Part shown: positions 6,838 to 48,158 of the stretch, in pieces
Layout: each line of letters opens with the position of its first letter
Position numbering within the stretch: position 1 is the first letter of the stretch
Assembly: GCF_023055435.1 (NCBI RefSeq)
Contig: NW_025963791.1
Coordinates: 17,794,001 to 17,858,000, forward strand
Direction: 5' to 3'
Length of the DNA stretch: 64,000 nt
Source: Haliotis rufescens
Lineage: Eukaryota
Translations under genes and position numbers: made by a program
The notes under the pieces: generated by a model
The model's database searches: none
What the model saw: only the letters and a program-made list of their open reading frames with translations
Told to the model about the DNA's origin: nothing

Positions 6838-8090
6838 ATGTCGGAGTGCCCAAAAGACTTTTACTTGGAACCATTGTCTGGGACTTGCAAACCTTGTGAT
6901 GAATTATGCCACCAAGCAACTGTCAGGGGGACAGTCAGACTCTGTCGAAGATTTTGTCCAGGTATTATAAAATATATTAAATAAATTAATCTAGTGACAA
7001 CGACACTCCAAACCTTGTGTTAAAGACTTTTAGACAAATAGTCGGATGCATACATCGTGATTACAGTCGTGTCACTTAAACGATTTCGTCGTGTTTTTTA
7101 GGTGAACATTTGACTTGCTTTTGCGTGTGTTTGTGACGGGTGCTACCCATGGGACAGGATACGACTCTCGGGAGCCTGGTATCATCACTACACGTACTTC
7201 TGATATAGTTGGAATCGTGGAATGGACTCTGATGTTAGCAGATATTCTTTATGATCATGGAAGGGCTTTTGTTGCGTTTAACTCTAAACATGGTATCTTC
7301 TGTGTTGTAGTGGTTGTTAATGCGCCTGTCACGGAGGCACCGATCGCGACTGATCCAGTTACGACAGTTTTCACACCCAGTTACGAGCAATCAACCAACA
7401 GCTTGAGTAGTGGTAAGTTATACTTTTCCAAACACTAAAATATACCTTTTGATCCTACGCTGAAGTGAACAAATAATTATTTTTTTTAAATCTTGGGAAG
7501 AAAGTAAAATTAACGCTTATTTTAAACTGTTAATGTGGATTGACTGTCTTTTGAAAATGATATCCGTCAAGTTATCAAGAATATTTCCAAATTGCGTTGG
7601 ATAGCATTGTTCTCGTCATTATTTCATGCTCATGATAGAGTCGGTATCGGACAACCGACTCTGTTTGGGGCATTCATTTCTTATGAATATGGAAAAGGGG
7701 TTTGTCGCTTTTATTTAATTATTAAAGTATGTGTTAAAAAGTGACAATTCTAAAGTTGATACAGAATCATGTCTGCTATGTGTTACGCATTCCATTGTTA
7801 GTTATACTTGTATCTGATCCATCTTATACTCATTCGTTTTCATCTTTCACCTGTCAGTGACGCACCACTGTCTCCGGCGTTCCATTATTCCTGTGTTCTT
7901 CTTTGCAGATGGTTCACTTGAAGCGCAATATGCCGTCATTATTCTAGCGACTTTAATCATCCTGATTTCCCTGGTACCGTTAGTGGTTCTCCTAAAAAGA
8001 GAAATTATAAACTTCCTGAACAGACGAAATATGGAGACGAAGCGCGAAACCTCGCCGGGAACCCGGTTTAATACCAATCTACAAATCTAG
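6838..8090 (+). CDS. Receptor gene 2: leaderless single-CRD TNFR-like membrane protein
   Basis: Exons 6838-6961 (MSECPKDFYLEPLSGTCKPCDELCHQATVRGTVRLCRRFCP), 7311-7412 (stalk VVVNAPVTEAPIATDPVTTVFTPS...), 7909-8090 (DGSLEAQYAVIILATLIILISLVPLVVLLKRE...TNLQI*). In-frame stop at 6793 upstream of the ATG. Confidence 0.85.
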
Positions 8091-8418
8091 AAATCATTCA
8101 ACAGAAATCCGATGATAAATAGGAGTACATTAACAAAAACAACAACCTCCAAATCATGAAAATATTATTGATACATGTATTTCAACATTAGAAATCAGAA
8201 TGCAGTCTTAATACATATATTTATATTTTATGCATGCCTCGCGTGAAGTCAGTCAGAAGAATGTCCATGCATATATCACGTCATACATTAAAATGCATCA
8301 TAAGTAAATGTTTACTTCACAAGTACATGTAGATCCTTTCTGTGTTTGTGGCGGGTGCCACCAGTGGGACAGGATACGCTCACCTTTTCTCGAATGGTTG
8401 GTGTCATCACTGTCTGAT

Positions 8419-8588
8419 AGTGAGTGAGTTAGTGAGTATGGTTTTACGCTGCTTTTAGCAATATTCCAGCAATATCACGGTGGGGGAAACCAGAAATGAT
8501 CTTCTCACATTTTACCCATGTCGGGAATGGAACATGGGCCTACGGCGTGAAGAGCGAACGCTTCAAATACTAGGCTACTCGACCGACC
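8419..8588 (-). mobile_element. tRNA-derived SINE family B copy
   Basis: Reverse complement of the element at 63400-63560; flanked by TSD ctgtctgat. Confidence 0.8.
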
Positions 8589-9889
8589 CTGTCTGATTCA
8601 CAAGCACATGCTTGGGCACTGCTGTTAGAAGAGACTTAAAATGATTATGAGAAAAAGAGAAAAATAATGCCTGTTTTAGTCAGGTTTGGTCACTTAAACT
8701 GTAACTTTAATGTAACTGCAGAACACACCAATCAAAGAGAATCACCATTCGAAATTTAATATTTCATCAGACTTTTCGAAAAAGAAAAACACCCACCAAT
8801 AAAACGTATAAAATAGTATTTATCACTGTTATTTTTGTATTTGCTGAATAAATCCACTGTTTGCATATTTTCAATGTCATGTCTCTTTCACCCCCCCCCC
8901 CCCCCCGCCCCCCCCCCCCCCCCACCCCCATGGAATGAGCCTGTTACGGTTTCACGCTCCTTAGCTGTTGTATGTAACTTTTACATGTTACATGTTTTAA
9001 TATGATTATTTATTTTGACCTACAATAATTACAAATTCTAGATATATCCAGCGAAAACAAAATTCGCATTGCAATAAAAGCAACAATAAACGCATTGGAC
9101 TGCGGTTTTCAGGCAACAAACACACTACTATTTTATGCAAGTTGTCAGAATACATCGTGCTCCCGACACGGTAAGACATGCTTGTCAATTCCTCGAACAC
9201 CTGGCGTCATCACTGATTTTCAGTGATCCATTCATATAATTTTCACCACTATTTTGCCTTGTACTCCCAATGGAATCTGTTTCGTCGGGTAATCAAGATG
9301 GGTTATTCCCTGACGTCAACGTTTTACATTTGCGCAGTTTTATTATCCATGTATGATGATAGTGAGTGAGTGAGTATGGTTTTACGCCGCTTTTAGCAAT
9401 ATTCCAGCAATATCACGGCGGGGGACACCAGAAATGGGCTTCACACATTTGTATGATGATAACTGGTGAATGGGTTAAGAAACGTTTACAAGCAAACAGA
9501 GACTCTAACTGAATATCCCGCCTGATCACATCATACAGTGTTTACTTTCTGGTGATGTACTCAATGACATCAATGTGCACAGACCCGGACATAGAAACAA
9601 AGACAAGGCGATAAATGTATCGGTGACATGGTACTCGACGCATGACGGCGGGCTTTTTCAAATAAAGAGGTCATGCAAATGGGGAATCATGAAAGGTACT
9701 GAACATTTTCTCCTCTGTATCACAATGTAAATCTTCTTGGAACGTTATTCAGTCTTTTAAATGTACTTGATATGTATATGTGTCATACTTGTTGCCTCAT
9801 GTGATATATAATACTGGGTGGTGTTTCCGGTAACGACCATATTGTGTATACAGGCCATACCATCTGTTCATTCAGTCCAGTATATGACA

Positions 9890-10598: not shown

Positions 10599-10968
10599 CT
10601 GTTCAGTATGACATTTTGTGTTTCGACATACGATTTGAATCTATGACCCAACATAACCGTATGTGTATATGTGGCAACCTAACAGTAGTGCATCGTTACC
10701 AGTGTCACAAGCATGGTAAATAACCGTGATGAAATGTCGGCACGAAAAGCTGCAAGAATCCTGATGCGACGATAAGCAATATACACTTGTCATTTCAATG
10801 TTACAAAAAGCAAACACACTGAGCACAAACGATCCACGTGATCTTGAAGACACGAGATGTTCGTGACGTTCTCTTCCCCACCTTCTCTCGTTTTAAGCGT
10901 CAGTGATAGTGACCAGTTGTATTATGTGTTACTAGTATGTGTATTTAGAAAAAATGTTTTTGCTGCAG

Positions 10969-13927
10969 ACTGCCAAAGAGATTATTATTACAATGCTGAC
11001 ACCAGAGACTGTCAAAGCTGTGCCCATCTGTGCCACCAGGCTGAGGTACGAGGGACGTTGCAGAAGTGTGGAGACTTATGTCCGGGTAAATGAAAATATA
11101 AGTGTGAAAATATTGTCCTAAACTCTAATATTCGGTCGTTCGTGAGTTAGTGAGTTAGTGAACACTATTTCAGTTATGCCGCGGCGTGTCAGCTCTATGT
11201 TGGCGGAAGCCACATTGTTTAAATCTACTAACACGGGTATGGTGCTGACAAACCTAGGAACATAATCACAGCGGATCAGGATTGACATCCCCAAGAGACG
11301 GAAGTATGGTACAACGATTTGTGGCGCTTATAAATATAGTTTGTATCTTCCAATTTTCTTTAGGTGATGAGGCGACATGTTTTAAAACAATCATAAAGTG
11401 ATATTGATGACATATTCCAGTTCCGGTTACAAACCAGTTCCCACACCGAACTACGGAGAACATGAAGACAACTGTCACGATAAGGATTCCAGATGGTGTA
11501 ACTGTGCACGATGGTAACTATGATGTTTAACGTCTGTAGACAACCAATTAAATCGTATGTTGAAATATGAAAGACAAAATCACATACACATCGGTGTGAT
11601 GACGATAACGGCAAGTTTTGGGGAAGTGGTGTTTGTGTCTTCAGGACGTACTGGCCATACGAAATGGACAATTTGGATAAATATTCTGATTCAGACACAT
11701 TGTGCAAACGATTCTGCATATTTACCTATTAAAGACGCTAAGGCGAACATGACACTGGAGCTGTACAGTAGAAACGTTTGCGAATCGTGCGATGCGTGGA
11801 GGCTATTAACTGAGTCTGTATGGCAAATATCATATATCAAGAATTACAATTTCATCTCATTCATCGCATCGAAGCACGGAACGGATAGGTAGTCACTGTA
11901 TGTGACATATAAAACGGATTGTGATACCACAATTATCTCACCTATGTCAAAACTTTGTTTACCAGGTTCCCCTCATGTTGTTGTCGTGGTCTGTCTGATG
12001 TCAGTTGTCCTGACCTTCCTGGTGGTACTGATGGTAGCTGTTGCCATTGCCTGGGGAAGGAGAAAGAAAAAGCAACAGAGACAAAGAATAACAGTTAACT
12101 ACCGACACAGGGATACAACCGAAGATGGTATACTTTTGATAATTCTCATGTTGAAACAACTATCGTAATGCCATGTCTTATCTTAAATCTCATGTATTTG
12201 GAATTAATTAACAAATTCGGCGTGATTAAATTTCCACACCTAACAATTATCAGATGAATGGTTCTGCTAAATATCCGAAAGGAAGAATTGAAAAGTCTAA
12301 GTGTCCACTTGAACATGTACCTGCAAATAAAAGAGACAAACCCCTCTCAAAAATCATAATAAATCTCTGATAAAAGCAGATTCCAACTTTATCATAAACA
12401 TGTGTTTATGAATAACTATATATAGTGATCATACTAAGCGTTCACGAAAAGGTCACCACCGGTGGCACCCGTCACAAACACATGCAACGGCAAGTCAATT
12501 ACCTGAAAAATCGTGTGAACATATGGCACAATTCAAAACAGGGAACTGCATCGAATCGAGTCGTATGACGCTCTTTGAAATCTTTGTTGTGAAAGGCAGA
12601 AACCCTATAGCTATAGCTGCAGAAATATTGCTCGACATAAAGGGAAAGTTGGAATCATTCCTCTAGTCATACAGTCTTGTGGATGGTCAAATTTTGATAT
12701 TTTGCTTAATGTATACAAGCTCTCCCAAATTAGTTGGAAGTACAAATTATACTCGACAGGTTTGAGATAATTAACATTGTCCAGAAGGAACGTTCGTACC
12801 CCAAATGTAAAGTGATGCTACAGTGATGCAATTCGATTTGGTATGGTGCAGCTCAGTGACATCACATTTGTTAAAAAAACATGATGCTGACATATATAGT
12901 AGACGTACAATGTTTTTGTGAACTTCGTGTGGCAAACGTAATACAATGATGCTGACCAGAGTTACCTCCCCTGAACCAGCATTTGACTGTGATTATTCAT
13001 ATAAAGTGAGTGAGTGAGTTAACAATTAACGTCACAACGTCATGTCGTGACGAGACCAATTTACATATTAAGAAGATATACATTTATAGTTTATAAAACC
13101 TGTAAAACAACTACAGATCCATAAAATTAAATATATAAGAGTCACACAAGACGCGGTGTATAATACACTTTTCTTTATTTCAGACACAGAAGAAGCCTTT
13201 AGAGAAGAGCCAACCTCCAATATCAGCATGTTGTCATGATAATTTATCATCTTCTAACAAGGTGGTGTCTCTTTAACATGGGCATGTATAGTACAATCAT
13301 GATGATTTAATATCATTCAGCAAGTGTTTTAATTACCAAACCTTATCATTCATCATTTTCTGTCAGTGTATGTCCATAAACATCTTTATTCTGAGATATA
13401 CGTCCATCATATAGCAATGTAAATATCGCCATCATTATTCAACTGTTTGAATCAATGTTTTTCAATGTTCTTTTTTAACATTTATAATAAAATGGTAATC
13501 ATGCAAAGTACTTTATGAATGTCATTTAGACTTTTGTGTACAATACTGCAATAAACATTCAACAGCATTTATCATCTATTTATTTTGCTGTGTTCATCTT
13601 CAACATTTATATTAATGTCATATCTTTCAACACATTGCTGGCAATCTTCAAAATGTTACATGTGTACTTCATCATGAAAAAAAACTGCAATTATCAACAA
13701 ATGATCATCATGATAGAAAAAGTTTTTAGATGTGTGTGGAATAATAAATACAAATAAAAGCTTATCAGTTGCAAACATGTGTATGTCATTTATTAACTGT
13801 GCAAACTGTTTTGTGATAGTATTTATGTAAATTTATGAAAATTATATTGTAGTTTCTTGATTTAGGTGAACTTTCGGACAAGTGTGCCTCTGTCAAAACA
13901 CATTGCATGGGCAATGAAAACGTGTGA
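10969..13927 (+). CDS. Receptor gene 3: CRD-stalk-TM-tail, first exon uncertain or disrupted
   Basis: Exons 10969-11085 (DCQRDYYYNADTRDCQSCAHLCHQAEVRGTLQKCGDLCP), 11421-11513 (stalk VPVTNQFPHRTTENMKTTVT...), 11966-12127 (TM VVVVVCLMSVVLTFLVVLMVAVAIAW then RRKKK), probable last exon 13866-13927 (GELSDKCASVKTHCMGNENV*). Start unresolved: ATG 10857 read-through, a mini exon ATGAAAG|gt at 9689-9695, or a decayed exon 1. Confidence 0.7.
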
Positions 13928-14870: not shown

Positions 14871-14945
14871 TTTATGATACCACTTTACGTCTGTCACGTG
14901 GGTACTACTACAAACTAAGCATCTTCTCAGTTCGATTCACACGCA

Positions 14946-16589
14946 ATGTACGTCAAATACGTCGAATTGGAACTTTGGCCGTCCTTGCTCACCTGGGTAT
15001 CGGAAAGCAGACCAAGCTGCAAACCCGAAGAGTACTTCGACATTGCAACACATGCTTGTCAGCCGTGTTCATGTCAATGCGTTAGTGAAACCGATTTGTC
15101 ATGCCCTGTGTGGATCAACGAAGGCACATGGAGCTCACACAATGAATTTCATCACTCACAAGATTGGAATCATTATTGCTGTTCAGACCAGTCATATTTG
15201 ATATATATAGAATACCATAATACATTTTCGTGCTAATGGGCTGATTGTTGATGTTTAGGGGCGGTTGTGTTTTTATAAACGTTGTAATTATGACATGTTT
15301 GCTATTTTTTTCTGAAATTGAAAGTGTTTTGTGATACATATTGTACTGCAGCCTGCCAGACAGACTTCTACTACGACGTGGCGTGGGAGATTGAGTTGTG
15401 CGAGTCTGTACCAACAGGCTGAGGGCAACAAATACTGTCTTTGTTTGTGGTTTAACGCCGCACTCAGGAATATTCCAGTTATATGACGGTGGTCTGTAAA
15501 CAATCAGTGATTGACATCATGAGCATCACATCACGCAATTGGGATACGATGATATGCCATCAACCAACTCACCGAATCTGACCCCCATCAGTTTTATCAC
15601 CTCTTACGACAATAATAAGTTGAGGTTTATATTCTCACATGGAATTCAAAAGTGGAGTTTCATTTTGTGTAACAAGATGCTTTTACAATTAAATAAACTA
15701 ACCAATCATTCATTCATATTGTTTGCAGTTGGAACGTCAGAGAGGACTGAACCAAGACGTAGTACACCAGTCCTTACCACGTCAAATCAAGCATTGACCT
15801 CACAGAGAATGAGAAAAGGTAAAGCTTCCCAATTCCATTGCATATTATGAGCCATTCGTTTGCATTCATTGCCCTCCAGTAGATACTGATTCAGACTGGA
15901 ATTCAAATAAGAACAGATCACATAATTAATTAGCTTCCATGCTTGGTAATGTAAAAATTGTAAAAGAAATTGAATAATATGATATATTTCATAAATAACC
16001 GTTTTATATAAATGAGCTGGCAACATCAACAATGTATCCATACATATCGTGATATTGAAATGAAAATGAAGATTTTTAAATGATTGAAATGCATCATCTA
16101 AAGCCATCTTCTGATATACACTCATACAGGTCTATATAAACATTGTATGGTCGTTTTGTGTGTGCAGATAGACATAAGTCAAGCATAGCAGTGGTCATAG
16201 CTGGGGTAGACGTCTTGGTTATCTCAGTGTGTGGCATTATTGCGTTTGTAAAGAAGCAATTGAAGCAACAGTGGCACCGTGTTATATATACAATTGCTGC
16301 TTCTGTAGATACAGGTGGGCAATCCAGAAATTTAAGGGCATTGGTTATTACCTATAGCCAAGAAAATTGTTTATATTTGATGTTTTCGTGTGTCGCATCA
16401 GTCATTTTACAAAAGTTAGAAATAAGTACTCAAATTAAGACACGGTTAAGATACTGTGTTTGTGTTTGTCTCATTAAATTCATTACATAATCTACATTTC
16501 ATATTTACATTTTGATGCAAAATCACACATTGCCGGTTTATGATCATTATTATGATTTTTATTATTATCATTATTATTAGTAGTAGTGT

Positions 16590-16646
<57 letters not shown>

Positions 16647-24562: not shown

Positions 24563-24564
24563 TC

Positions 24565-33497: not shown

Positions 33498-34996
33498 ATG
33501 GGAATTTGCTCAAAAGATTTTTACTGGGAAGCAGTCTCTGGCACCTGTCAGCCTTGTGATGAACTCTGCCACCAAGCCGATGTCAGGGGGACAGGCGCAC
33601 GCTGTAGAAAACTGTGTCCAGGTACCATGGAATTCATATAATTAAAACTGATGAAAAATCTAATACGAGATGTGCAAGAAATATGACACAATATAAAGTA
33701 TTAGGAGACTCGTCCAAACATTTCAGTTTGATACATTGACAACTGAAATAGATGTATTCACCTGTATTTAACATCCTTTCAGATCTTGCTGTGAATATAC
33801 TGTTTCATGTTATAAGTGGTAAACTATCGCTTTTAAAAGTATGATCTAAAATTATAAAAGCTCGGGACTTGTATGAAATTGATATATTGCATGTCTATAA
33901 CATTACTGTGTTTCAGTGTCGCTGCCGGAGCCTGTGACAGCTTTATTGAATGCTCCAACTGCAACAACGTCTGCAACTCTACTATCAGACGATACCTCAA
34001 GTAGTGAACGATGTGAGGTTCCAAGTATCTAGTGCATAATAGGGCATTATATACAAATTTTTATACCAAAAGTAGTTGGTGTATTGTCTCGATCAAACGC
34101 ACAGAATACTAGCAGTACATGTGGTATGATATGTAAAGAATGTAGTATTTCTTTAATACCTTATGAACAATCTGCAAAAGATGCACGTCACGTTATGAAT
34201 ATCCAAACCATGTTAAACTATTACCTCATACCATTTATTGTTGTCATAAAATATCTAACCCCGTGGGGATTCCGGGTTAGAATTGATCCCCAGAAACCTA
34301 TGCTGGGCTGGCTAATTGACTTAGTTCATCGCATGCCATTGACCCCGTTGCTCATAACATCAATCACTGCATTGTCTGGTCCAGACTCCATTATTTATAA
34401 CCCGCCGCCATATAGCTGGAATAATGATTGCTGCAGAGTTGAGCAACAAACAATTAAGTGTCTCGATTTAGTTTGTGCACATGCAATTTGTTTGAGTAAT
34501 TGAAGGCAACAAAGTTGAACAAAACGAAAATCTGTCATGATGAAGTCATTTGGACTCACCATACTATAATTGTAATAACCGAGCCATGCTTTTGAAATTC
34601 TGGGGCAACTTAAACAATCAATGGAGATCTATTTGACAGATTTGTGCTCGGAACTGCCTGTTAAATAAAATGAGCGCCTTCTTACCAATGGTTATTTGCA
34701 CCAGTTTATGTTTTTTGACAAAAGAAAGCTTGATTTGAACCTTACTAAGGATTACGTTAGATTGATCTTATGTGTTATAATAAATATTTAGCTGAATAAA
34801 CAAATAAGGGTTTTTTTCAGATGGGTATGGGGCGGCAGAATATGCTGTCGTTATACTGGCTGTGAGCATCCTCCTGATTTCTCTGGTGTCCTCGGCAGTT
34901 TTGTTCAGAAGAGAAATATATTTGATCTTTTACAGGCTAAAAGTAAAGTACTGTCAACGTTGTAAACCCAGTTCAAATCTGAGAAGACAAGTATAA
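33498..34996 (+). CDS. Receptor gene 6: leaderless single-CRD TNFR-like membrane protein
   Basis: Exons 33498-33621 (MGICSKDFYWEAVSGTCQPCDELCHQADVRGTGARCRKLCP), 33917-34012 (stalk VSLPEPVTALLNAPTATTSAT...), 34821-34996 (YGYGAAEYAVVILAVSILLISLVSSAVLFRRE...SNLRRQV*). TM exon clearly homologous to gene 2. Confidence 0.85.
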
Positions 34997-36237: not shown

Positions 36238-38346
36238 ATGTCCGACTCAGTCGAAACAGATGTTTGGAGGGTGTTGGTTAAACCTCATACGAACATAGTA
36301 CGATTCCTTTTGGCATCTGTGTTACTATGTCTAGTAGCAGGGAAGCCGATATGTGAAGGGGGGACATACTATGACATCGTTACCGACAATTGTGACCCTT
36401 GTAGTCATATATGTGACTATTCCGAGGCACAGAAGACAACAACAGAATGCGAAACTAAGTGTCCAGGTAAGATTAACGCTAGCTCTGCTTCACATGACCC
36501 TTGTTTATTCGCATCGCGTTGTGATGTAATAGCCAGTACGTTACATGGTTGCAGTCGTAAAACGCGTACAGTACACTAACTGTAACTTGATTTTATTGTC
36601 CCTTTTCATAAATACTTATCACACGTTTGACATTAAGAAAAGGAGAATGCAGAGCCTGTGCCATTTTATTTGCAAACGTATATATGCATTTCATTTGTTG
36701 TGTGTCCAGGTGGGTTTAGAATTTGCTTCATTGAGACCAGGGAGAGTGATTTTAAAAATCTATTTTCCTTCTAGAATATGGTAAGAGAGGATCTCTCCAT
36801 CAACCAGGGAGCGTGATAATGAAAATCTATTTTCCGTCTAGAATATGGTAAGAGAGTATATCTCCATCAACCAGGGAGCATGATTATGAAAATCTATTTT
36901 CCTTCTAGAATATGGTAAGAGAGGATCTCTCCATCAACCAGGGAGCGTGATTATGAAAATCTATTTTCCTTCTAGAATATGGTAAGAGAGGATCTCTCCA
37001 TCAACAGAAATGCCCCTATCTACAATATTATGACGACGTTGTGTCCCGATGTGACTCCTGTGAGAGCATCTGCCTCCATGCTGGACCACAGGATCCGGGC
37101 CATCAAGAAACATGTCGACGTCTCTGCCCTGGTCAGTTTTTTCTCCTTTCCAGATACTCGATCATTTAAAGGTGTATTAATATCATTTCCTTTAATCTTT
37201 GGTGGATATCCCTATAGTTACAGAGATAATACATGATATTGTTAAAATGTGTAAGGAATGTTGTTGTTTTGTTACAGAATGGCCTGGTTATAGCATTACA
37301 ACTGTGTCTCCACAAGATTCCACCATGAAAAATCCTCAGAATAAATCACTCGCCAAAGACAATCTGCCTTATACATGTCCGTGTATTGTTCAATTTTGTA
37401 TTTCTTTAATCATTTTCCCCCACATAAATGTATACAATGGTTGTAACCTCATCAATGCAATATAAACATGAATATTTTTTAAAGGCAACACTAATTTCAG
37501 ATAACATAATTACTGCATTTGTGAAAAATTGCATTCAGTTACTTATGTTACAAAAATTAACGTATGATCCTGCTTGTTTTGTCATGACTGAAGCTATTGT
37601 ACACAAACATACATTTTCGATGTTTTTTCATACAGTGGGCAGCAACGTTATCATCATACTGGCGACGTGTGTCATAGCGGTTGCTGTTGTTGGCCTTCTG
37701 TGTGTGGGCGTGATAAGGAGGAAGAAGTCTTTCTGTCAGCGACAGCATCATCCAAAACCAACACCAGGTATTTGTCACCTTCTGTCACCAACACCAACTT
37801 TCACCAATACCCACACAAATATGAATCCCCAACGTCCCTTAATAAATGACATAACTACCAAGATCCCCTTCATTCAACCATCTGTAAGTTCATCCCTCAT
37901 CCACGACATACGTCCACCCTTACGATTACAACATGTCACCAACATCTCCGGCCCATTACCCACACGCTGCCACTGCCACTGCCACATCAGGTCGGACCAT
38001 ATGACAAATTGCGGGTGTTTCCACAGATAAATATTGCTCACGTTATATATACGGGAACCCTTATGTCATGTGATTCGCTAATACAAATCAGCTTTAGTTA
38101 ATTATTTTCAGTTGTTTTATTACATTTTAATAATAAAAAAACATAAAAAGATGGTTTTCTGTATATTCCAGGTATTGACGCGGATAACACAATCTGTATA
38201 AACTAAGACCCAAAACAGATTTATCAGATTTGATTTTCGTGAATGTATGCTTCATACTCAATTTTGTCTGCTCCTCAGAACTCTTGACTGGCGAAGGAAA
38301 CCCTCTCACTCAGCCCGAGGATGACAAACAGTTTCAAGGAAGATAG
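36238..38346 (+). CDS. Receptor gene 7: long leader/signal + two CRDs + stalk + TM + tail
   Basis: Exons 36238-36466 (MSDSVET...FLLASVLLCLVAGKPICEGGTYYDIVTDNCDPCSHICDYSEAQKTTTECETKCP), 36976-37131 (EYGKRGSLHQQKCPYLQYYDDVVSRCDSCESICLHAGPQDPGHQETCRRLCP), 37278-~37376 (stalk EWPGYSITTVSPQDST; donor uncertain), 37636-37767 (TM VIIILATCVIAVAVVGLLCVGVI RRKK), 38279-38346 (ELLTGEGNPLTQPEDDKQFQGR*). Confidence 0.8.
36737..37004 (+). repeat. 4 x 67-bp tandem repeat spanning the intron1/exon2 boundary of gene 7
   Basis: Unit ccagggagcgtgattatgaaaatctattttccttctagaatatggtaagagaggatctctccatcaa starts at 36737, 36804, 36871 and 36938. Confidence 0.92.
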
Positions 38347-41900: not shown

Positions 41901-44900
41901 TTTGTTGAAGCTAAAAACGATGTGTTAATTTTGAATTAAATCTGCGGCGAACAAGTGCAGAGATTCTGCTGCTTACAAGCAAAGAGGAACTCTTGTTCAA
42001 CACGTTTTGGAGGTCGAAGGGCATTTACGCAGATAACTGTTACAAGAACAACCATTCTGTTCATAACTACTGCCACACATATCCTGTTCAACACGAGCNN
42101 NNNNNNNNNNNNNNNNNNNNNNNNNNNNNNNNNNNNNNNNNNNNNNNNNNNNNNNNNNNNNNNNNNNNNNNNNNNNNNNNNNNNNNNNNNNNNNNNNNNN
42201 NNNNNNNNNNNNNNNNNNNNNNNNNNNNNNNNNNNNNGAGTCGATTATTTACCTGCTGCCATGATATAGACGGACTGTTGATGGCGTCAAACAACAAACG
42301 GACATCAGACAAAATTACAATAATCAGTATTAATGGTTCATTGGATAATATAATGCTTTTAAAAAACCCTATACACACCAGTAAAACCTGAACAACACTT
42401 CAGAACTATCATCATGGTATCATTGCTATTTGATTGTGATTAAAAAACAAAGGCACATGATATTCTCGGAATCGTCCAATCGACTCTGCTTTTAGCGGAG
42501 ATTTCTTATGAATATAGAAATGGTTTCGTAGCTATAAATGTTCATATTTACGTGCCCCTGAACACCACGATCTCATCATTTCATTTGTTTTTCTGTGAGT
42601 ATATATTTTATGCCCGATGGAATCTGTATTGGTGGATAATCAAGTCTGGCGTTGACGTTTTCAAAGTTTGAGTAAAACACGGTACGTAATCAATGCATTT
42701 CGACCATCACTACACGACTAAAACATATCCATCGATTATATGACGTATTGATGAATGCAGGGTCATGACACGGAATCATTTGGTTTGTGCGTGGCCAGTC
42801 AGTCGGAAACGAGGGCAGTCGGGATTTTACAGGAGAAATGGCGACCTGTCCGAGGGACTTCTATATGGATGGAAAATCTGGAAAGTGTCAGTCTTGTGCT
42901 GAGCTGTGCCATCAAGCCGAAGTTAGGGGAACTGTCGAACTTTGCACCAACCTTTGTCCAGGTGCTGTCAATCCACTCATTAAATCCCCAAATAGAAATG
43001 TAACAAAATAACAAACATTCACTTTGTTTATATATATGATGTTTGCAGCTGGAAAGCATGAAACCTAAGCATAGCATGTACATACATGTATAGGTACTTA
43101 AGATATACAAACTCACCGTGTTCATGGAAGCGTCTTATAGGAGTTCTTATAGGAATCTCAAAAGTTGATAACCCTTATCATGGTCAATGTGAACCAAACA
43201 AATGATGCTATAAGCTTTCCTCTTGCTCTTCCTTTTCATAGTCGCTCTTATTAAGTAAATTAATTCCAAAGACATAATTTATTGTATTTGGTATGCAACA
43301 TGTATGGAAATTGTTTCAGTAAAAGGCCATTGTAAATGCCACTTCCTGTGAAATATATGTTCATGGCAGTCTGTTTATGATAGTGTCTTCAGATAACTCT
43401 GTTCCGGAGGCTTACATTGACACGGCTACAACCACCAGTGCAACTGAGGCAGCAGTTATTGCACCGATCGATGGTGAGTGTTATAATGTGACAGAATATT
43501 TCTTCAGTACAGGGTTACTAATTCCAATGAGGAATCATCATGCTTTGAGTATATCTTCACTGATATACATGCATGTACATTCAACGAACCTTTTGAATCA
43601 TTCTTTTTTGTCTCGCTGTTCTAGATGAGAACCTGATACCAGAGGGGGTGGTCATCACACTGGCAGTGGTCATCATCCTAGTGTCCCTGGCGGCCTTGGT
43701 CATCCTACTGTTCTGTGAAAGAATTGAAAAACACGCAAGCCATCGGAGAGGGCTGGATGAGGACGTGGAACCGTCGGTTACCCTGAATAGCGTCCCTGTG
43801 AATCTGCATTGAATTTCACAATATGTGCACAAGAAACCTCGAATCGGCTATTTTGGGCAGCATCTCATCAGCTGTTGCTTGATAAAGATAGCTGTAGGTG
43901 AATGAATATATCAATACTTGGTATTAGTTGAATGTTATTATGTTAGGGTTTTATTTCATCAATTTAATTGATCCTTGTCTATTCAGCAACTACAAAACCA
44001 AAGTTGGATCCATACGTATCCCTGAATTCTGTAGTATAGAATTGAATGGTGACTGTAGTCTACAAACCGATGTTAAATTTGATGGGAAGTGGTTTGTTAT
44101 TGAACTATTATAAGTGTCATTTTGTACCAATAATGCCTTTGTAACCATTATGTGCTTTGCCATAATACATTATGAATTTAGTTTTTAGTTTGAAATAATT
44201 AGACAGTAAGGAATATACATAAGTGAGTGAATAAAAGTGCACGCCTGAACAAGTTTAAAATATATTTATTATGGACATAAACATTGAAACGGAAACAGCA
44301 CAGATTTGAACATTTTTTTGTCACATGCACCAGCTAATTACATATTAAAACATTTCTCACATTATTAGGGAATCAAAGTTTCAAGGGAATACACATTTTC
44401 TAAGATGTGTTTAAGATTTTAGGAAACGTCGTAAATCCACGTATAATTAAGGCTAATGGAATGGAATTAAAATTAAAAAATGCATTCATTATATCGTACA
44501 GTTATTTGTTGATTTCATTCAACTATATATAGCTGCTTAAAATCGAAAAAGAATGGTTATTTTCTGTTCAATATGGCCAGTGTTGATAAACTCAGGAAGG
44601 CGTAATTGNNNNNNNNNNNNNNNNNNNNNNNNNNNNNNNNNNNNNNNNNNNNNNNNNNNNNNNNNNNNNNNNNNNNNNNNNNNNNNNNNNNNNNNNNNNN
44701 NNNNNNNNNNNNNNNNNNNNNNNNNNNNNNNNNNNNNNNNNTTATACCTAAATTTATATATATATATATACATGTGTGTGTGTGTATAGATATATATATA
44801 AAANNNNNNNNNNNNNNNNNNNNNNNNNNNNNNNNNNNNNNNNNNNNNNNNNNNNNNNNNNNNNNNNNNNNNNNNNNNNNNNNNNNNNNNNNNNNNNNNN

Positions 44901-44936
44901 NNNNNNNNNNNNNNNNNNNNNNNNNNNNNNNNNNNN
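38951..44936. other. Assembly gaps (N runs)
   Basis: N runs at 38951-39127, 42099-42237, 44609-44741 and 44804-44936. Confidence 0.98.
42838..43812 (+). CDS. Receptor gene 8: probably leaderless single-CRD TNFR-like membrane protein
   Basis: Exons 42838-42961 (MATCPRDFYMDGKSGKCQSCAELCHQAEVRGTVELCTNLCP), 43393-43473 (DNSVPEAYIDTATTTSATEAAVIAPID), 43625-43812 (DENLIPEGVVITLAVVIILVSLAALVILLFC...VPVNLH*). A phase-1-compatible acceptor at 42832 leaves an upstream coding exon possible. Confidence 0.83.
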
Positions 44937-45235
44937 TAAACAAAGCGTGGAAAACACATACATATATATGTATGTGTGTTCCACGCTTTGTTTAGGTATA
45001 AGTGATACAAATTTATAGAGGCTCATTCATGCGTTGTGTCGGTTATACATAGGTACAGCTTATAAAAAATGCAATCATTTGTTAACTAAAGTCTTCATGA
45101 CCTTATCTCAATTAAATCTCATCAATGACCGTTATTAAACTCGTTTATGCATTCATTTAATTTGGTAGTTTTTACCGCATTACACGTTCACCAGTTTGGA
45201 CCTGAAAAAACGGGTCATCTAAAAAAGAGCAACAT

Positions 45236-45255
45236 GGGAAAATCCATTGACGTCA
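45236..45255 (+). promoter_or_regulatory. kappaB + CRE composite upstream of gene 9
   Basis: GGGAAAATCC at 45236-45245, then a perfect CRE TGACGTCA at 45248-45255; same arrangement as upstream of gene 7. Confidence 0.55.
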
Positions 45256-45441
45256 CGAAAGGTTTCGTGATTCACAGTCCATTGTTAACAGCAGTTTAAA
45301 ACATGGCGTCTTGGGTGGATCGCTCCAGAATGTTCGTCCTCATTGCCAGACACAGGAAGCAGCCGGACACCCGTCTGAAACGGACCAGGAGTGAACGGAC
45401 ACTGGAAACACAGGGAGTTCCGAATATATCGTTTCAAAGTC

Positions 45442-45943
45442 ATGTCCGAGTCAACCGAAACCATTGTTCAGAGGGTATCGGTTAGACTTGATATGAATTG
45501 TCTATTTCGAATCCTTGTGACGAGTGTGTTATTATATCAAGTCAGCGGTAGGCCCGTGTGTAAAGAAGGGATGTATTATGACAGCGTCACCAACAACTGC
45601 GATCCCTGTAGTGACATATGTGAATATTCTGAGGCACAAAAAACCACAGTGGAATGCAGAACAAAGTGTCCAGGTAAAGTCAATATTGTAATATATGCAA
45701 TTCATCACATATTTCTGTAAAACAGGAAATGTGAAAAGAAATAAATATTTTCGTCCCTTTCGCTTCTATGTGTGCATCGACTGAAATATTTTCAAAATCC
45801 GGGTGTAGAATATAATTATCAATGCAAGCACAGCAATAAAAAGTGTAGGTTTCCGGCATCCAGATACCTTCAGCAACCTTCAAATTTCTTGGTAATTTCC
45901 AGATAATTTTTTCATGTGTTTCACACTTAAGTGAACAAAATGC

Positions 45944-45977
<34 letters not shown>

Positions 45978-48158
45978 ATGCCGGAAACCTACACTTTTTT
46001 TGCTGTGAAGACAATAACCAGCAAAGACTATCCGACCAAACAGACAGGAATATGTACAAGCTGGTATCCGGATATAAGCAGTTATTTCATTGCAATGTTA
46101 GATTTACATGTTAATGCACGAAAGTTACATGACACTTTGGGACGGGATTGGCCCAATATCAAAGCCAACCAAAATCAGTGGGTGATTACAAAACACCATG
46201 GTCTTATTGGTGCAATTTACATGTACCTTATTCATTTCAGTAACAGTGAAATAGTTTGTATATCGTCATATGCCAGAAACCATCCAAAAATATCGACCAA
46301 TGTGATGCTATGTTAATAATATCAGCCAGTGAAAAAGCAAGATTGGGTGTAAATTTATTCTCTGCGAACATGTTTGTGTAAAGTGTTGATACAGATTTGT
46401 TTCGATTGGGAGAAGATCAAGATCATGGGTAGTTTTTATGCTACACCCTGTTGAAAATAAAAGTGTTTTGTATTTGAAATGCATTAATTACCATAATCAT
46501 GCGATATCAAGAACTAAAGCGTCTTCATGAGTATACATCATAATGAGTGGATAGGACTATCTGTACTTAGATTGATACATAATGAATAAAAACGACAAAA
46601 CCCTTTCTATATTCATAAGAAACTTCTGCCAAAAACATCAATACGAGTCCGACAATATCATGAGCATGTGTTTATGAATCACTATCAAAAAGTGATACCA
46701 GTTGCTCGCGAAAAGGTGAGCGTACACAAGGTATATACATGGTATTAATTTTTTTGTTATATGACTTCTTACGGCATCTCGTCTATAGGAACAGGTAAAA
46801 GACATTTCAAACCACGTTAGACATGTACTCTAACAATATATATATACATGTAGGATATTTACATTTCTTTCTCTTCTATAGGTTATGGTAGCAGAGGAAG
46901 CCGAGGTCTGCAAAGAGAAAGTATGTGTCCGCCTCAACAATATTATGATGAAAATGTAAACCGATGTGACTCCTGCGATTCTGTCTGTGTCAATGCAGAA
47001 GGAGAAGTCTGTCGACGTTTATGTCCGGGTAAGTATAATTTAAAACTTGAAGATATTCATTTGTTATCTGCTTTATATCCTGGAAAAGTGTGCAGATGTG
47101 TAAATTTATATATTTATTATAACACTGGGCCTTTGTTTCTTAATAATTATGCACAGGTATTGATGACGGATAATTCATTTACAAACTGAAACGTATGTGT
47201 TTATATAAATGATAAAGTATGCTTGTGTTGTTTTTTTAACAGAATGGCCTGGTATTACCCAAACAACAACATATGGTCAAGATGAATCCACCAAGATGAA
47301 TCTCCATGCTTTATCACTGGCAAATGGTATTCTACCTTGTCGTGAAAAACGACTTAAATGTATATTCATAATATGCTGGATAGAAGAGCATATATGATTT
47401 GTCTATGTACTGGGTACAGAAGTACACCATAAATGTCAGAGACACATATGCCTGTCATCATTAACGCTTTAAGCAAAGACTCTGTGTCACAGATGTACAT
47501 GTGTAATAGATGTAACTATTGTGAATAACAACAATACGTATATCAGTTGGAATAACGGTACCTGTTCCTGTGTTGCAGTGGTCGTCACCTACACGCCCGC
47601 ACCTGTGATTGTACTGGCATGCATTGTAGTAGTAACTGCTGCAGCTGGCTTTTGTGTTTTGATAATTCATCTAACAAGGAGGAAGATGTGTTTCTGGCAG
47701 CCTCAGCAGGCTAAACCAGGTGGGGATGCACATCAATTTAATACACAGATTAACAACCTTGCACTATTACTGAACATTCATGAAATCAATGTACACTATG
47801 TAATTATTAATACACACTAATGCATCCGCAGGGAGGTGTAGTGTATATATCGCATGTCCAATCACCATACATTTAATAGTACAGGTCATAAAGCTTGTTA
47901 ACCCTTAACTATATTGAATGTCAGACTAACCTCATCCAGTAAACAAGCAAAACAAGACACACGGAAACACATTACTTAGAATCAAACACTAACTGATACA
48001 ATAGGCATTAAATTGATACTTAATCCTTTGTCTGCTCCTCAGATCATCTGACTGGCGAAGGGAACCCTCTCACCCAGCCCGAGGATGACCGTCATTGTGA
48101 AAACAACGCAACACAATGCCATGCTGCAGTTATTTCTCAACCAAGCAACGAAATGTAG
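45442..48158 (+). CDS. Receptor gene 9: leader/signal + two CRDs + stalk + TM + tail (closest paralog of gene 7)
   Basis: Exons 45442-45673 (MSESTET...MNCLFRILVTSVLLYQVSGRPVCKEGMYYDSVTNNCDPCSDICEYSEAQKTTVECRTKCP), 46882-47028 (GYGSRGSRGLQRESMCPPQQYYDENVNRCDSCDSVCVNAEGEVCRRLCP), 47243-~47326 (EWPGITQTTTYGQDEST...), 47579-47719 (TM VIVLACIVVVTAAAGFCVLII), 48043-48158 (DHLTGEGNPLTQPEDD...QPSNEM*). Confidence 0.85.

What the first reader, a model, noticed from the sequence alone, without database searches (positions are those of the whole stretch)
6838..48158. Two receptor architectures, interleaved: leaderless single-CRD (type III-like) versus signal-peptide double-CRD
Seen: genes 2, 6 and 8 all begin M-x-x-C (MSEC, MGIC, MATC) in purine -3 context. 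They have one CRD with LCHQA[TDE]VRGT, a fused TM+tail exon and tails ending near NL (TNLQI, SNLRRQV, VNLH). Genes 5, 7 and 9 have a hydrophobic leader, a CRD1 with IC-x5-QKT, a second CRD, a stalk starting EW and a separate last exon. From 21 kb on the order alternates B-A-B-A-B (5,6,7,8,9), and 7/9 are closest paralogs. Established: BCMA, TACI and BAFF-R are leaderless type III proteins, whereas Fn14 and Grindelwald have signal peptides. Inference: an A+B two-gene cassette was duplicated, possibly a paired-receptor or co-receptor system, and both topologies coexist in one invertebrate locus.
Basis: partly seen in the sequence, partly recalled or inferred. Interest (0 to 1): 0.75.

Follow-up and report, generated by a model that had tools for sequence, protein, structure and literature searches.

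The report
Leaderless and leader-bearing small abalone TNF receptors
A red abalone gene cluster encodes tiny receptors resembling fly Grindelwald and human BCMA/TACI, and one young subgroup has lost its export leader, so it probably enters the membrane the way BCMA does.

Summary
The window (red abalone by RefSeq names) carries nine + strand genes with 12 small six-cysteine domains. Genes 2, 6 and 8 start M-x-x-C, with one domain and a fused membrane-plus-tail exon. Genes 5, 7 and 9 have a hydrophobic leader, two domains, an EW stalk and a separate last exon.

Spliced RNA contigs from 3 of 4 runs run colinear from 6721 through an in-frame TAA (6793) to the only ATG (6838). The fourth contig stops matching at 6814 and is unresolved. 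RefSeq models of genes 2 and 8 start at the same ATGs. Gene 6 rests on homology alone.

The domain is closest to Grindelwald by predicted fold (Z 5.1) and to TACI/BCMA by profile (E 0.002-0.01). Pfam thresholds are not reached.

The window is part of a roughly 350-kb array (36 of 38 matches in the genome). The four leaderless genes form one clade nested among leader-bearing relatives, so the loss looks derived and single.

Cassette duplication is compatible with the data but unproven. The paired-receptor idea is untested. Mollusc Grindelwald homologues are already in a preprint. The scan's notes showed no earlier finding of this family on other DNA.

The parts
6721..6837 (+). Gene 2, 5' untranslated part of exon 1 (minimum extent). 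It holds an in-frame TAA at 6793 and no ATG.
   Evidence: Contigs X1 record 7, X3 record 14 and X7 record 26 are colinear from 6721. ATG and stop scan. The contigs start at the edge of a highly repeated SINE, so the true transcript start is unknown.
6838..6961 (+). Gene 2 exon 1, coding: MSE plus the A-type CRD. Phase-1 donor CCAG|gt.
   Evidence: Identical to RefSeq XP_048248318.1 (P0003).
7311..7412 (+). Gene 2 exon 2, stalk.
   Evidence: Spliced contig pieces at 7309-7411. tblastn of P0003. Splice sites read.
7909..8090 (+). Gene 2 exon 3: transmembrane segment plus a 32-aa tail ending TNLQI*.
33498..33621 (+). Gene 6 exon 1: MGI plus the A-type CRD. Further in-frame ATGs at 33459 and 33462.
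   Evidence: No RNA or protein model seen.
33917..34012 (+). Gene 6 exon 2, stalk. The 3' end is approximate (an alternative donor lies after 34003).
   Evidence: By homology to the gene 2 stalk.
34821..34996 (+). Gene 6 exon 3: transmembrane segment plus tail ending SNLRRQV*.
42838..42961 (+). Gene 8 exon 1: MAT plus the A-type CRD.
   Evidence: Identical to RefSeq XP_046380655.2 (P0002).
43384..43473 (+). Gene 8 exon 2, stalk.
43625..43812 (+). Gene 8 exon 3: transmembrane segment plus tail ending VNLH*.
21098..21290 (+). Gene 5 exon 1: leader MADHLSFLGCGVLLIWYIAESS plus CRD1.
   Evidence: 74% identical to the H. asinina protein P0026.
21733..21876 (+). Gene 5 exon 2: CRD2.
22174..22278 (+). 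Gene 5 exon 3: EW stalk.
22468..22653 (+). Gene 5 exon 4: transmembrane segment plus juxtamembrane tail with an AQEE motif.
23061..23113 (+). Gene 5 exon 5: separate last coding exon (VPENERPSPPAPDLNT*).
36238..36466 (+). Gene 7 exon 1: long leader (MSDSVETDVWRVLVKPHTNIVRFLLASVLLCLVAGKPI) plus CRD1.
36975..37131 (+). Gene 7 exon 2: CRD2. The 5' end is approximate.
37278..37376 (+). Gene 7 exon 3: EW stalk. The 3' end is uncertain (candidate donors after 37376, 37382 and 37397).
37636..37767 (+). Gene 7 exon 4: transmembrane segment plus juxtamembrane.
38279..38346 (+). Gene 7 exon 5: last exon with the conserved LTGEGNPLTQPEDD.
45442..45673 (+). Gene 9 exon 1: leader plus CRD1.
46882..47028 (+). 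Gene 9 exon 2: CRD2. The 5' end is approximate.
47243..47326 (+). Gene 9 exon 3: EW stalk. The 3' end is uncertain (candidate donors after 47326 to 47359).
47579..47719 (+). Gene 9 exon 4: transmembrane segment plus juxtamembrane.
48043..48158 (+). Gene 9 exon 5: last exon with LTGEGNPLTQPEDD. The stop ends at 48158.
66..186 (+). Gene 1 A-type CRD exon, with a splice acceptor 5 nt before the first Cys. Context: the same CRD type with upstream exons.
   Evidence: RefSeq isoforms P0001 and P0004.
10969..11085 (+). Gene 3 A-type CRD exon, with a splice acceptor 2 nt before the first Cys and no nearby ATG. Ends approximate.
15018..15110 (+). Gene 4 divergent, BCMA-like CRD.
42099..42237 (.). Assembly gap 601 nt upstream of gene 8's ATG. 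It could hide an upstream exon. Not filled.

Best explanation
The window is part of a roughly 350-kb tandem array of small TNF-receptor-like genes in red abalone. Each ectodomain is one or two 39-residue six-cysteine modules. The module is a beta-hairpin followed by a helix-loop-helix, as in Drosophila Grindelwald and vertebrate BCMA/TACI.

Genes 5, 7 and 9 are conventional type I receptors. Their parts run signal peptide, CRD1, CRD2, stalk, transmembrane segment and a tail split over two exons.

Genes 2, 6 and 8, together with LOC124152025 just upstream of the window, form one young clade. In this clade the CRD exon has become the first coding exon, and translation starts 0-3 codons before the first cysteine. 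They have no signal peptide, an ectodomain of about 80 residues, an acidic N-terminal flank and a basic C-terminal flank around the single transmembrane segment. I infer that this segment acts as a reverse signal-anchor and puts the N-terminal CRD outside the cell. That is type III topology, as in BCMA, TACI and BAFF-R.

This state is derived from leader-bearing ancestors and arose once.

I infer that the receptors bind members of the abalone's very large TNF-ligand family. The leaderless ones have short (29-36 aa) tails without recognisable TRAF motifs. They are therefore more likely ligand sinks or modulators than strong signallers.

Shown: gene structures, gene 2's transcript and start codon, fold similarity, clade structure, purifying selection.
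Inferred: topology, ligand, signalling role.
For: Structure and start of gene 2.
- Spliced contigs in 4 of 4 runs show exon joins at about 6961>7311 and 7412>7909. The middle piece is listed in X5 and X7. In X1 and X3 I infer it from 103 unlisted record letters.
- In 3 of 4 runs the contig is colinear from 6721.
- The only ATG in 6721-6840 is 6838, and an in-frame TAA sits at 6793.

Protein models.
- RefSeq proteins of genes 2 and 8 start MSEC and MATC.
- Of the 10 best library hits to the A-type profile, all Haliotis, 6 start within 12 residues of the first Cys with no hydrophobic stretch. Three carry a leader, and one has two CRDs with no leader.

Hydrophobicity and charge.
- The best 9-residue hydrophobicity in the first 35 aa is 0.19-0.54 for the leaderless proteins and 2.5-3.3 for the leader-bearing ones.
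- The 15-residue flanks of the transmembrane segment carry -2 to -4 on the N side and 0 to +5 on the C side.

Fold and family.
- AlphaFold model of the gene 2 CRD from a 34-row alignment: pLDDT 85.3, a hairpin plus three short helices.
- VIA-align: Grindelwald Z 5.0-5.1 (41 of 42 residues, rmsd 2.6-2.7), BCMA Z 3.0-3.4, TACI Z 2.7. All 11 rows listed are these three proteins.
- A 34-CRD profile against PDB sequences gives TACI E 0.0019-0.0026 and BCMA E 0.011-0.11. The top 12 of 15 hits are these two.
- The spacing C-x3-C-x11-C-x3-C equals the Grindelwald C2 module as given in PMC8024323.

Array. 38 CRD matches in the genome, 36 of them on C13 between 17.777 and 18.127 Mb.

Single derived origin.
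- 8 CRDs carry the LCHQAxVRGT-type motif. Four have an ATG 0-3 codons before the first Cys. The other four have a phase-1 acceptor instead.
- The four with the ATG form a clade (93/95) inside the A-type clade (94/91).

Selection. dN/dS is 0.12-0.35 among the leaderless CRDs.

Ligands. 82 matches to the TNF domain PF00229 over its cut-off in the genome.

Tails. No TRAF2 or TRAF6 consensus in any of the 4 leaderless tails. AQEE is present in gene 5 and its H. asinina relative.
Against: - No topology predictor or experiment was available. Type III is inferred from the missing leader, the charge rule and the need for the disulphide-rich domain to be luminal.
- Genes 6 and 8 had no RNA test. Reads were laid on gene 2.
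- Gene 8 has possible phase-1 AGs at 42802, 42832 and 42835, though with weak pyrimidine tracts (8-11 of 20), and a gap lies 601 nt upstream.
- Run X5's contig matches only from 6814 and leaves 22 letters unplaced. This is either sequence divergence (that contig differs at 6 letters plus a gap in the last exon) or use of the AG at 6814-6815 to join an upstream exon. That junction would be phase 2, unlike the phase-1 introns of the family.
- Contigs start at 6721 because a repeat begins there, so the transcript start is unknown.
- In H. rubra a relative has an in-frame upstream coding exon (MTVDKPTG...). It is hydrophilic and not a leader.
- Family assignment is below curated thresholds. Pfam BCMA-Tall_bind gives E 5.9e-4 (20.3 bits, cut-off 27) for gene 4 only. 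TACI-CRD2 gives E 0.07-0.1. Genes 2 and 6 get no Pfam hit and gene 8 only a chance one. Foldseek E-values are all 0.3 or higher. The A-only profile hits TACI at E 1.
- The tree rests on 39 columns. Only 3 of 31 inner branches are starred.
- The scan for tail motifs used regular expressions only.
Confidence: 0.68

Rival explanations
1. Hidden leader. Genes 2, 6 and 8 are ordinary type I receptors whose signal-peptide exon lies upstream, possibly in an assembly gap. Gene models and short-read contigs would then have missed it.
For: - The frame is open for 14-23 codons upstream of each ATG. Phase-1 AGs exist upstream in genes 6 and 8.
- Relatives with the same CRD type do have upstream exons: gene 1 isoforms and H. 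asinina P0010.
- Run X5's contig stops matching at 6814, beside an AG.
- A gap lies 601 nt upstream of gene 8.
Against: - For gene 2, contigs from 3 of 4 runs (two studies) read straight through the supposed acceptor and through an in-frame TAA. Gene 2 has no phase-1 AG between that stop and the ATG.
- RefSeq models in H. rufescens, H. cracherodii (four accessions, one protein) and H. rubra all lack a hydrophobic N-terminus.
- Among the 8 A-type CRDs, an ATG sits beside the first Cys exactly where the tight acceptor is missing.
- tblastn with five known N-terminal stretches (two of them hydrophobic leaders) found nothing in the window (best E 0.15).
Confidence: 0.14
2. Decaying remnants. The leaderless genes are 5'-truncated copies of two-CRD receptors. 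They are transcribed but make no functional surface protein.
For: - The tails are short, very divergent and lack known motifs.
- Gene 8 and LOC124152025 share the stalk and transmembrane segment but have unrelated tails.
- Transcript depth for gene 2 is low, at 3-13.
- No protein model of gene 6 surfaced. Gene 3, an A-type gene without the leaderless start, also has none.
Against: - All three genes have intact frames, canonical splice sites and all six cysteines.
- dN/dS of the CRDs is 0.12-0.35.
- Gene 2 is correctly spliced in 4 of 4 runs.
- Close counterparts persist in H. cracherodii and H. rubra.
- The charge distribution is as expected for N-out insertion.
Confidence: 0.1
3. An A+B two-gene unit (6+7) was duplicated to give 8+9, and each A works with its neighbouring B as a pair.
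For: - Genes 7 and 9 are sisters (96/48) and share DNA similarity in their first and last exons.
- dS is of similar size for 6-8 (1.9) and 7-9 (1.5).
- In both pairs A's stop lies 1.2-1.6 kb from B's ATG, against 4.5-10.4 kb for B to A (coordinates).
- The tree ((2,6),(8,LOC124152025)) needed by the model is not rejected (p-AU 0.257).
Against: - There is no similarity outside the exons of genes 7 and 9, and none at all between genes 6 and 8 at E 1e-5.
- Gene 6's sister is gene 2 (98/93), not gene 8. The free tree places gene 8 outside (LOC124152025,(2,6)).
- A 6+8 clade costs 13.7 log-likelihood units (p-AU 0.079).
- The dS values rest on about 25 sites and are saturated.
- Upstream, an A-type CRD exon sits 2.3 kb before another B-type gene but has no transmembrane exon of its own.
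- There is no evidence on co-expression or physical pairing.
Confidence: 0.3

Closest known systems
Drosophila Grindelwald (PDB 6zsy, 6zt0)
   Same: - Single small CRD made of a beta-hairpin plus a helix-loop-helix.
- Identical C-x3-C-x11-C-x3-C spacing of the helical module (PMC8024323 passages).
- Best structural neighbour of the gene 2 model: Z 5.0-5.1, 41 of 42 residues, rmsd 2.6-2.7.
- Single-pass receptor of a TNF ligand.
- Grindelwald homologues in molluscs are reported in preprint 10.1101/2024.07.27.603686 (passages).
   Different: - Sequence match is marginal (phmmer E 0.14).
Genes 2, 6 and 8 do not.
- The abalone B-type has two CRDs.
- The abalone hairpin keeps the Y-x-D/E signature of BCMA and TACI.
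Vertebrate BCMA (TNFRSF17), TACI (TNFRSF13B) and BAFF-R
   Same: - Best sequence relatives among solved structures: TACI E 0.0019, BCMA E 0.011.
- A hairpin acidic residue at the position of the DxL motif: D or E in 30 of 34 abalone CRDs, N in 2, and one residue out of register in 2 (my count on the alignment).
- Very short ectodomain.
- These are type III proteins without a signal peptide (PMC6001812 passage), the topology predicted for genes 2, 6 and 8.
   Different: - Pfam gathering thresholds are not reached, and structural Z is only 2.7-3.4.
- The leaderless state arose inside the abalone family, so it is convergent and not inherited.
- The residue two places after the acidic one is L or V in only some copies.
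- No BAFF or APRIL orthologue was shown.
- The tails lack the TRAF motifs I scanned for.
Drosophila Wengen
   Same: From memory only (Kanda et al. 2002; nothing seen here), Wengen was described as a type III TNF receptor. If so, a leaderless and a leader-bearing TNF receptor already coexist in one invertebrate genome.
   Different: I could not confirm this in the library. According to PMC8024323, Wengen's CRD conforms better than Grindelwald's to known TNFRs. Wengen and Grindelwald are not tandem paralogues with a traceable switch.
Fn14 (TNFRSF12A)
   Same: Single small CRD with a C2 module, named with BCMA and TACI as resembling Grindelwald (PMC8024323).
   Different: It was not among the sequence or fold hits listed.

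Membership tests
Small-CRD TNF receptors (Grindelwald / BCMA / TACI type) | Six-cysteine CRD folding as a beta-hairpin plus a helix-loop-helix | tested here: met
   All six Cys are invariant in 34 of 34 aligned CRDs. AlphaFold model: pLDDT 85.3, strands 8-11 and 16-19, then helices. Grindelwald Z 5.1, BCMA Z 3.0-3.4, TACI Z 2.7. Z values are low in absolute terms, as expected for 42 residues.
Small-CRD TNF receptors (Grindelwald / BCMA / TACI type) | Sequence match to the curated family models (Pfam BCMA-Tall_bind, TACI-CRD2) at the gathering score | tested here: not met
   Gene 4 scores 20.3 bits against a cut-off of 27. Gene 9 CRD1 and gene 5 CRD2 score 13.1-13.5 against 22.9. The A-type exons get no relevant hit. 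Profile-to-PDB matches are supportive but marginal (E 0.002-0.1).
Small-CRD TNF receptors (Grindelwald / BCMA / TACI type) | Single transmembrane segment C-terminal to the CRD, with a short stalk | tested here: met
   One hydrophobic segment per gene, 40-70 residues after the CRD.
Small-CRD TNF receptors (Grindelwald / BCMA / TACI type) | Binds a TNF-homology-domain ligand through the hairpin tip | not testable with these tools
   Indirect only. The hairpin acidic residue is D or E in 30 of 34 CRDs, with 2 more out of register. The genome has 82 PF00229 matches.
Small-CRD TNF receptors (Grindelwald / BCMA / TACI type) | Cytoplasmic TRAF-binding motif | tested here: inconclusive
   Regular-expression scan. 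No motif in the 4 leaderless tails or in genes 7 and 9. AQEE in gene 5 and in H. asinina P0026.
Type III (leaderless, N-terminus-out) membrane proteins, as BCMA/TACI/BAFF-R | No cleavable N-terminal signal peptide on the mature mRNA's reading frame | tested here: met
   Gene 2: an in-frame TAA lies upstream of the only ATG within the transcribed exon in 3 of 4 runs. Hydrophobicity of the first 35 aa is 0.19-0.54. Gene 8 rests on the RefSeq model only. Gene 6 rests on sequence only. No SignalP run was available.
Type III (leaderless, N-terminus-out) membrane proteins, as BCMA/TACI/BAFF-R | Single transmembrane segment with the positive charge on the C-terminal side and a short N-terminal domain | tested here: met
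   N-flank -2 to -4, C-flank 0 to +5. The transmembrane segment starts at residue 82-85 in the proteins of gene 2, gene 8 and LOC124152025.
Type III (leaderless, N-terminus-out) membrane proteins, as BCMA/TACI/BAFF-R | Experimentally shown N-out orientation | not testable with these tools
   Needs tagging, glycosylation mapping or protease protection.

The most novel reading that the evidence does not exclude
Abalone shows, inside one gene cluster, the same type I to type III switch that separates vertebrate BCMA/TACI/BAFF-R from their signal-peptide relatives. A CRD exon that was internal became the first coding exon by gaining a start codon beside its first cysteine. The gene survived under purifying selection and duplicated at least three times. 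The resulting short-tailed, leaderless receptors sit 1.2-1.6 kb upstream of two-CRD receptors and work with them. They would act as ligand sinks or co-receptors that tune a TNF-ligand family of about 80 domain copies.
Probability: 0.22. Interest if true: 0.65.

Novelty: new variant of a known kind. Interest (0 to 1): 0.45.

Why it matters
Small one-domain TNF receptors are the least understood branch of the superfamily. It is unclear why BCMA, TACI and BAFF-R do without a signal peptide.

This locus offers close paralogues with and without a leader and a datable single transition. At least one leaderless member has a confirmed transcript. That makes the question directly testable: does a 40-residue disulphide-rich domain cross the membrane without a leader, and what changes functionally when it does?

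The locus also shows that mollusc TNF-receptor repertoires are under-counted. All these genes are annotated "uncharacterized", and none reaches a Pfam threshold. One published pipeline filters receptor candidates by type I topology (preprint passage). Meanwhile the ligand family is very large.

Tried and rejected
Searches that gave little.
- Pfam on 10 single exons gave only sub-threshold hits.
- The A-only profile against PDB hit only TACI at E 1.
- Word-index protein searches with P0003 and P0039 returned only the query and its own isoforms. They gave no model for gene 6 or for H. rufescens gene 3.
- tblastn of five N-terminal stretches from relatives against the window gave only noise (best E 0.15).
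- Foldseek E-values were all 0.3 or higher. I rely on ranks and VIA Z instead.
- Looking for a third A-to-B pair upstream failed. The A-type CRD exon at C13:17,780,182 has no transmembrane exon before the next B-type gene.
- Literature: no paper on abalone small-CRD receptors or on leaderless mollusc TNF receptors surfaced. Wengen's type III status could not be confirmed.
- Earlier-findings look-ups by words gave nothing relevant.

A reading I dropped. I first read a phase-1 acceptor upstream of gene 2's ATG. The script showed the AG at 6814-6815 is phase 2.

Rows dropped.
- Three of the 26 CRD loci outside the window (L018, L019, L025) did not fit my cysteine pattern. Like gene 4's CRD, they were left out of alignment A4 and the tree.
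- Of the 34 library hits I read 28 sequences and looked up names for 20.

Papers and how much I saw.
- 10.1101/2024.07.27.603686: passages.
- PMC8024323: passages.
- PMC6001812: passages.
- All others: search listings only.
- Kanda et al. 2002: recalled, nothing seen.
- Supplements were closed. The preprint's supplementary trees may list Haliotis homologues that I could not see.

Full report
WHAT IS THERE

The window is eukaryotic, 31-43% G+C. RefSeq names of exactly matching proteins place it in red abalone, Haliotis rufescens. It sits at C13:17,794,001-17,858,000 of the assembly.

A six-frame pattern search found 11 cysteine-rich-domain (CRD) exons, all on the + strand. Gene 4 adds a divergent twelfth. 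A hydrophobicity scan found one transmembrane exon per gene, giving nine genes.

All four assembly gaps lie between genes (with exon coordinates). No exon, intron or reading frame of genes 6-9 crosses a gap. Gap 42099-42237 lies 601 nt upstream of gene 8's ATG and could hide an exon. I did not fill any gap.

THE OBSERVATION

- Genes 2, 6 and 8 start MSEC, MGIC and MATC, each with G at -3.
- Each has one LCHQA[TDE]VRGT CRD.
- The transmembrane segment and tail share one exon, ending TNLQI, SNLRRQV and VNLH.
- Genes 5, 7 and 9 have a hydrophobic N-terminus fused to CRD1 (IC-x5-QKT) and a second CRD.
- Each also has a stalk exon starting EW and a separate last exon.
- Every intron junction that I could place exactly is phase 1.

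There are three qualifications.
- Gene 6 has two more in-frame ATGs 13 codons upstream, but they add no hydrophobic core.
- Gene 7 has no ATG where gene 9 has its second one. It must use the conserved upstream ATG, which is exactly where the DNA similarity between genes 7 and 9 begins.
- Genes 1 and 3 carry the same CRD type but have a good splice acceptor 2-5 nt before the first cysteine and no ATG there.

Exons were searched separately, and the whole-protein queries were database proteins.

IS GENE 2 REALLY LEADERLESS?

- Runs were found with gene 2's DNA. They held 0.17-0.37 of its sampled words, about the exonic share.
- Contigs of four runs from two studies were laid on 2600-8500.
- They are spliced, so they come from RNA. 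The pieces are 6721-6959, 7309-7411 and 7908-8448.
- Allowing for 1-2 ambiguous letters, these are the GT-AG junctions 6961|7311 and 7412|7909 of my model and of RefSeq XP_048248318.1.
- In X1 and X3 the middle piece is not listed. I infer it from exactly 103 unlisted record letters. In X5 all three pieces are listed.
- In X1, X3 and X7 the first piece is colinear with the genome from 6721.
- Within 6721-6840 the only ATG is 6838, and an in-frame TAA lies at 6793.

In those transcripts no in-frame upstream coding exon can exist.

Two caveats apply.
- The contigs begin at 6721 because a very abundant SINE ends there (bins 6540-6736 have a depth near 10^6). The transcript start is therefore unknown.
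- The X5 contig, from a differently labelled organism, matches only from 6814 and leaves 22 letters unplaced. It differs at 6 letters plus a gap in the last exon. This may be divergence, or use of the AG at 6814-6815. That junction would be phase 2, unlike the family's phase-1 introns. I could not lay reads a second time.

GENES 6 AND 8

There was no RNA test for either.
- Gene 8's RefSeq model (XP_046380655.2) begins MATC.
- No model of gene 6 appeared. Its three exons are intact with usable splice sites.
- Phase-1 AGs exist upstream of both ATGs but follow weak pyrimidine tracts (7-11 of 20).
- Local tblastn with five N-terminal stretches from relatives found nothing.

COMPARATIVE EVIDENCE

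An A-type CRD profile was run against 1.84 billion representative proteins.
- It gave 34 hits at E 0.001 or better and 11 at E 1e-10 or better.
- The ten best are all Haliotis: rufescens, cracherodii, rubra and asinina.
- Six of these ten begin within 12 residues of the first cysteine and have no hydrophobic stretch.
- One (gene 1 isoform X1) has two A-type CRDs and no leader.
- Three have leaders: gene 1 isoform X3, LOC124114032 and H. asinina P0010.
- H. rubra isoforms add an in-frame upstream exon (MTVDKPTG...). It is hydrophilic.

Hydrophobicity separates the two classes cleanly. The values are 0.19-0.54 for the leaderless proteins and 2.5-3.3 for the leader-bearing ones. The charges around the transmembrane segment follow the positive-inside rule for an N-terminus-out orientation.

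WHAT FAMILY?

- Single exons gave only sub-threshold Pfam hits: BCMA-Tall_bind E 5.9e-4 for gene 4, and TACI-CRD2 E 0.07-0.1 for gene 9 CRD1 and gene 5 CRD2.
- Gene 2's CRD alone hit Grindelwald at E 0.14.
- Profiles did better. With 12 CRDs the top 12 PDB hits were all BCMA or TACI (best E 0.0028). With 34 CRDs, TACI reached E 0.0019 and BCMA E 0.011.
- An AlphaFold model of gene 2's CRD (pLDDT 85.3) has a hairpin followed by helices.
- Foldseek ranked BCMA, Grindelwald and TACI first, but at E 0.3 or higher.
- VIA-align gave Grindelwald Z 5.0-5.1 over 41 of 42 residues, BCMA Z 3.0-3.4 and TACI Z 2.7.
- The spacing C-x3-C-x11-C-x3-C is that of Grindelwald's C2 module. The same paper groups Grindelwald, BCMA, TACI CRD2 and Fn14 by topology (PMC8024323, passages).

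I therefore file the genes as Grindelwald/BCMA/TACI-type small TNF receptors, with the curated sequence test not met.

A preprint reports 115 Grindelwald homologues across invertebrates, including bivalve molluscs. It filtered receptor candidates by type I topology (10.1101/2024.07.27.603686, passages).

THE WIDER LOCUS

The 12-CRD profile found 38 matches in the genome. Of these, 36 lie on C13 between 17.777 and 18.127 Mb. I fetched all 26 matches that lie outside the window.
- Most are exons that fuse a signal peptide to a CRD1. The leader-bearing type is therefore the common one.
- Only 8 CRDs carry the A-type motif: five in the window, plus L001, L002 and L005.
- Four of them have an ATG 0-3 codons before the first cysteine: genes 2, 6 and 8, and L001, which is LOC124152025.
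- The other four have a phase-1 acceptor there.

In a tree of 34 CRDs (39 columns, so weakly resolved) the A-type forms a clade (94/91). The four leaderless genes form a clade within it (93/95), and genes 2 and 6 are sisters (98/93, starred). The leaderless state is therefore most simply derived and single.

The A-type profile's best stretch falls on the second CRD in 7 of 11 leader-bearing hits for which I compared the stretch with the sequence. A-type CRDs are also 41-49% identical to B CRD2 against 31-33% to B CRD1. This hints that the A-type CRD descends from a membrane-proximal CRD whose upstream exon was lost. This is inference.

dN/dS among the leaderless CRDs is 0.12-0.35, which argues against pseudogenes.

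CASSETTE DUPLICATION

- A blastn comparison of 32.5-38.95 kb with 39.1-48.6 kb found only two matches, the first and last exons of genes 7 and 9. It found nothing between genes 6 and 8 and nothing non-coding.
- Gene 6 is closest to gene 2 (93 of 117 nt). Gene 8 is closest to LOC124152025 (85% over the CRD).
- Forcing genes 6 and 8 into one clade costs 13.7 log-likelihood units (p-AU 0.079). Forcing gene 8 with LOC124152025 costs 3.1 (p-AU 0.257).
- dS is 1.9 for 6-8 and 1.5 for 7-9, against 0.5 for 2-6 and 0.41 for 8-LOC124152025.

These values fit an old A+B duplication followed by younger single-gene copies. However, they rest on about 25 synonymous sites and are saturated.

The spacing also fits. 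A to B is 1.2-1.6 kb, while B to A is 4.5-10.4 kb, the latter inflated by transposons.

The model is compatible with the data but not demonstrated. Nothing bears on physical or functional pairing.

MECHANISM

I commit to the following, with the inferred steps marked.
- The B genes are type I receptors.
- The A genes 2, 6 and 8 are inserted by their single transmembrane segment as a reverse signal-anchor, with the CRD outside (inferred).
- Both classes bind members of the abalone TNF family, which has 82 PF00229 matches in the genome (binding is inferred).
- The leaderless tails are 29-36 residues, diverge strongly and lack TRAF consensus motifs. Gene 5 keeps AQEE, and genes 7 and 9 share LTGEGNPLTQPEDD.
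- The A genes therefore more likely modulate ligand availability or partner with other receptors than signal strongly alone (inferred).

NOVELTY AND SCORE

Known already:
- Small one-CRD TNF receptors.
- Type III topology in BCMA, TACI, BAFF-R and XEDAR (PMC6001812 passage).
- Mollusc Grindelwald homologues (the preprint).
- From memory only, Drosophila Wengen is also type III.

New here:
- A traceable, apparently single switch from leader-bearing to leaderless inside one tandem array.
- Transcript proof of the leaderless start for one member.
- The size of the abalone array.

I found no paper on this. I rate it a new variant of a known kind, with interest 0.45.

Noticed in passing
window 43372-43723 and G000:C13:17773846-17774202 (- strand): Gene 8 and LOC124152025 share a 352-bp tract at 92% identity. 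It covers the stalk exon, the intron and the transmembrane part, and it ends just after the transmembrane segment. Their CRD exons are only 85% alike and their tails are unrelated. This looks like gene conversion or a mosaic duplication.
   Followed up: partly
L028 (G000:C13:17778601-17788600) and window 66-186: RefSeq isoform X1 of gene 1 joins an A-type CRD exon at C13:17,780,182 to gene 1's CRD 14 kb downstream. This skips a complete two-CRD B-type gene (CRD1 at 17,782,569, CRD2 at 17,783,366, transmembrane segment at 17,784,686) that would lie inside the intron. It is either a nested gene or a read-through model.
   Followed up: partly
window 10857-11093: In H. rufescens, gene 3 has no ATG next to its CRD (it reads ...FAADC behind a strong acceptor). 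H. rubra models of its counterpart begin MKAC. An in-frame ATG at 10857 would add 38 residues with a short hydrophobic stretch (LYYVLLVCVF). No H. rufescens protein model was found.
   Followed up: partly
window 15018-15110: Gene 4's CRD (CKPEEYFDIATHACQPCSCQC...) gives the best single-exon Pfam hit of the locus, to BCMA-Tall_bind (E 5.9e-4, below the cut-off). It fits neither the A nor the B class.
   Followed up: no
window 38279-38346 and 48043-48158: The last exons of genes 7 and 9 keep LTGEGNPLTQPEDD. The DNA is 87% identical over 77 nt, more conserved than their CRDs. This is an unrecognised cytoplasmic motif that matches none of the TRAF patterns I scanned.
   Followed up: partly
window about 6443-6750, 4957-5280 and 8313-8500: SINE-like repeats with very high RNA contig depth (10^5 to 10^6). 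One ends about 90 nt upstream of gene 2's ATG, and gene 2's contigs start at its edge. Whether the transcript starts in the repeat is unknown.
   Followed up: no
whole genome G000: There are 82 six-frame matches to the TNF homology domain (PF00229) over the family cut-off. They cluster on contigs C605, C168, C556, C568 and C580, and none lies near this receptor array.
   Followed up: no
window 6814 (run X5, record 17): One RNA contig matches gene 2 only from 6814 and has 22 further letters that do not lie on the stretch. It is either a possible alternative 5' exon or allelic divergence.
   Followed up: no
window 31361-32050 (- strand) and 25024-25917 (+ strand): Transposase reading frames of 229 aa and 297 aa lie in the 10-kb spacer between genes 5 and 6.
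   Followed up: no
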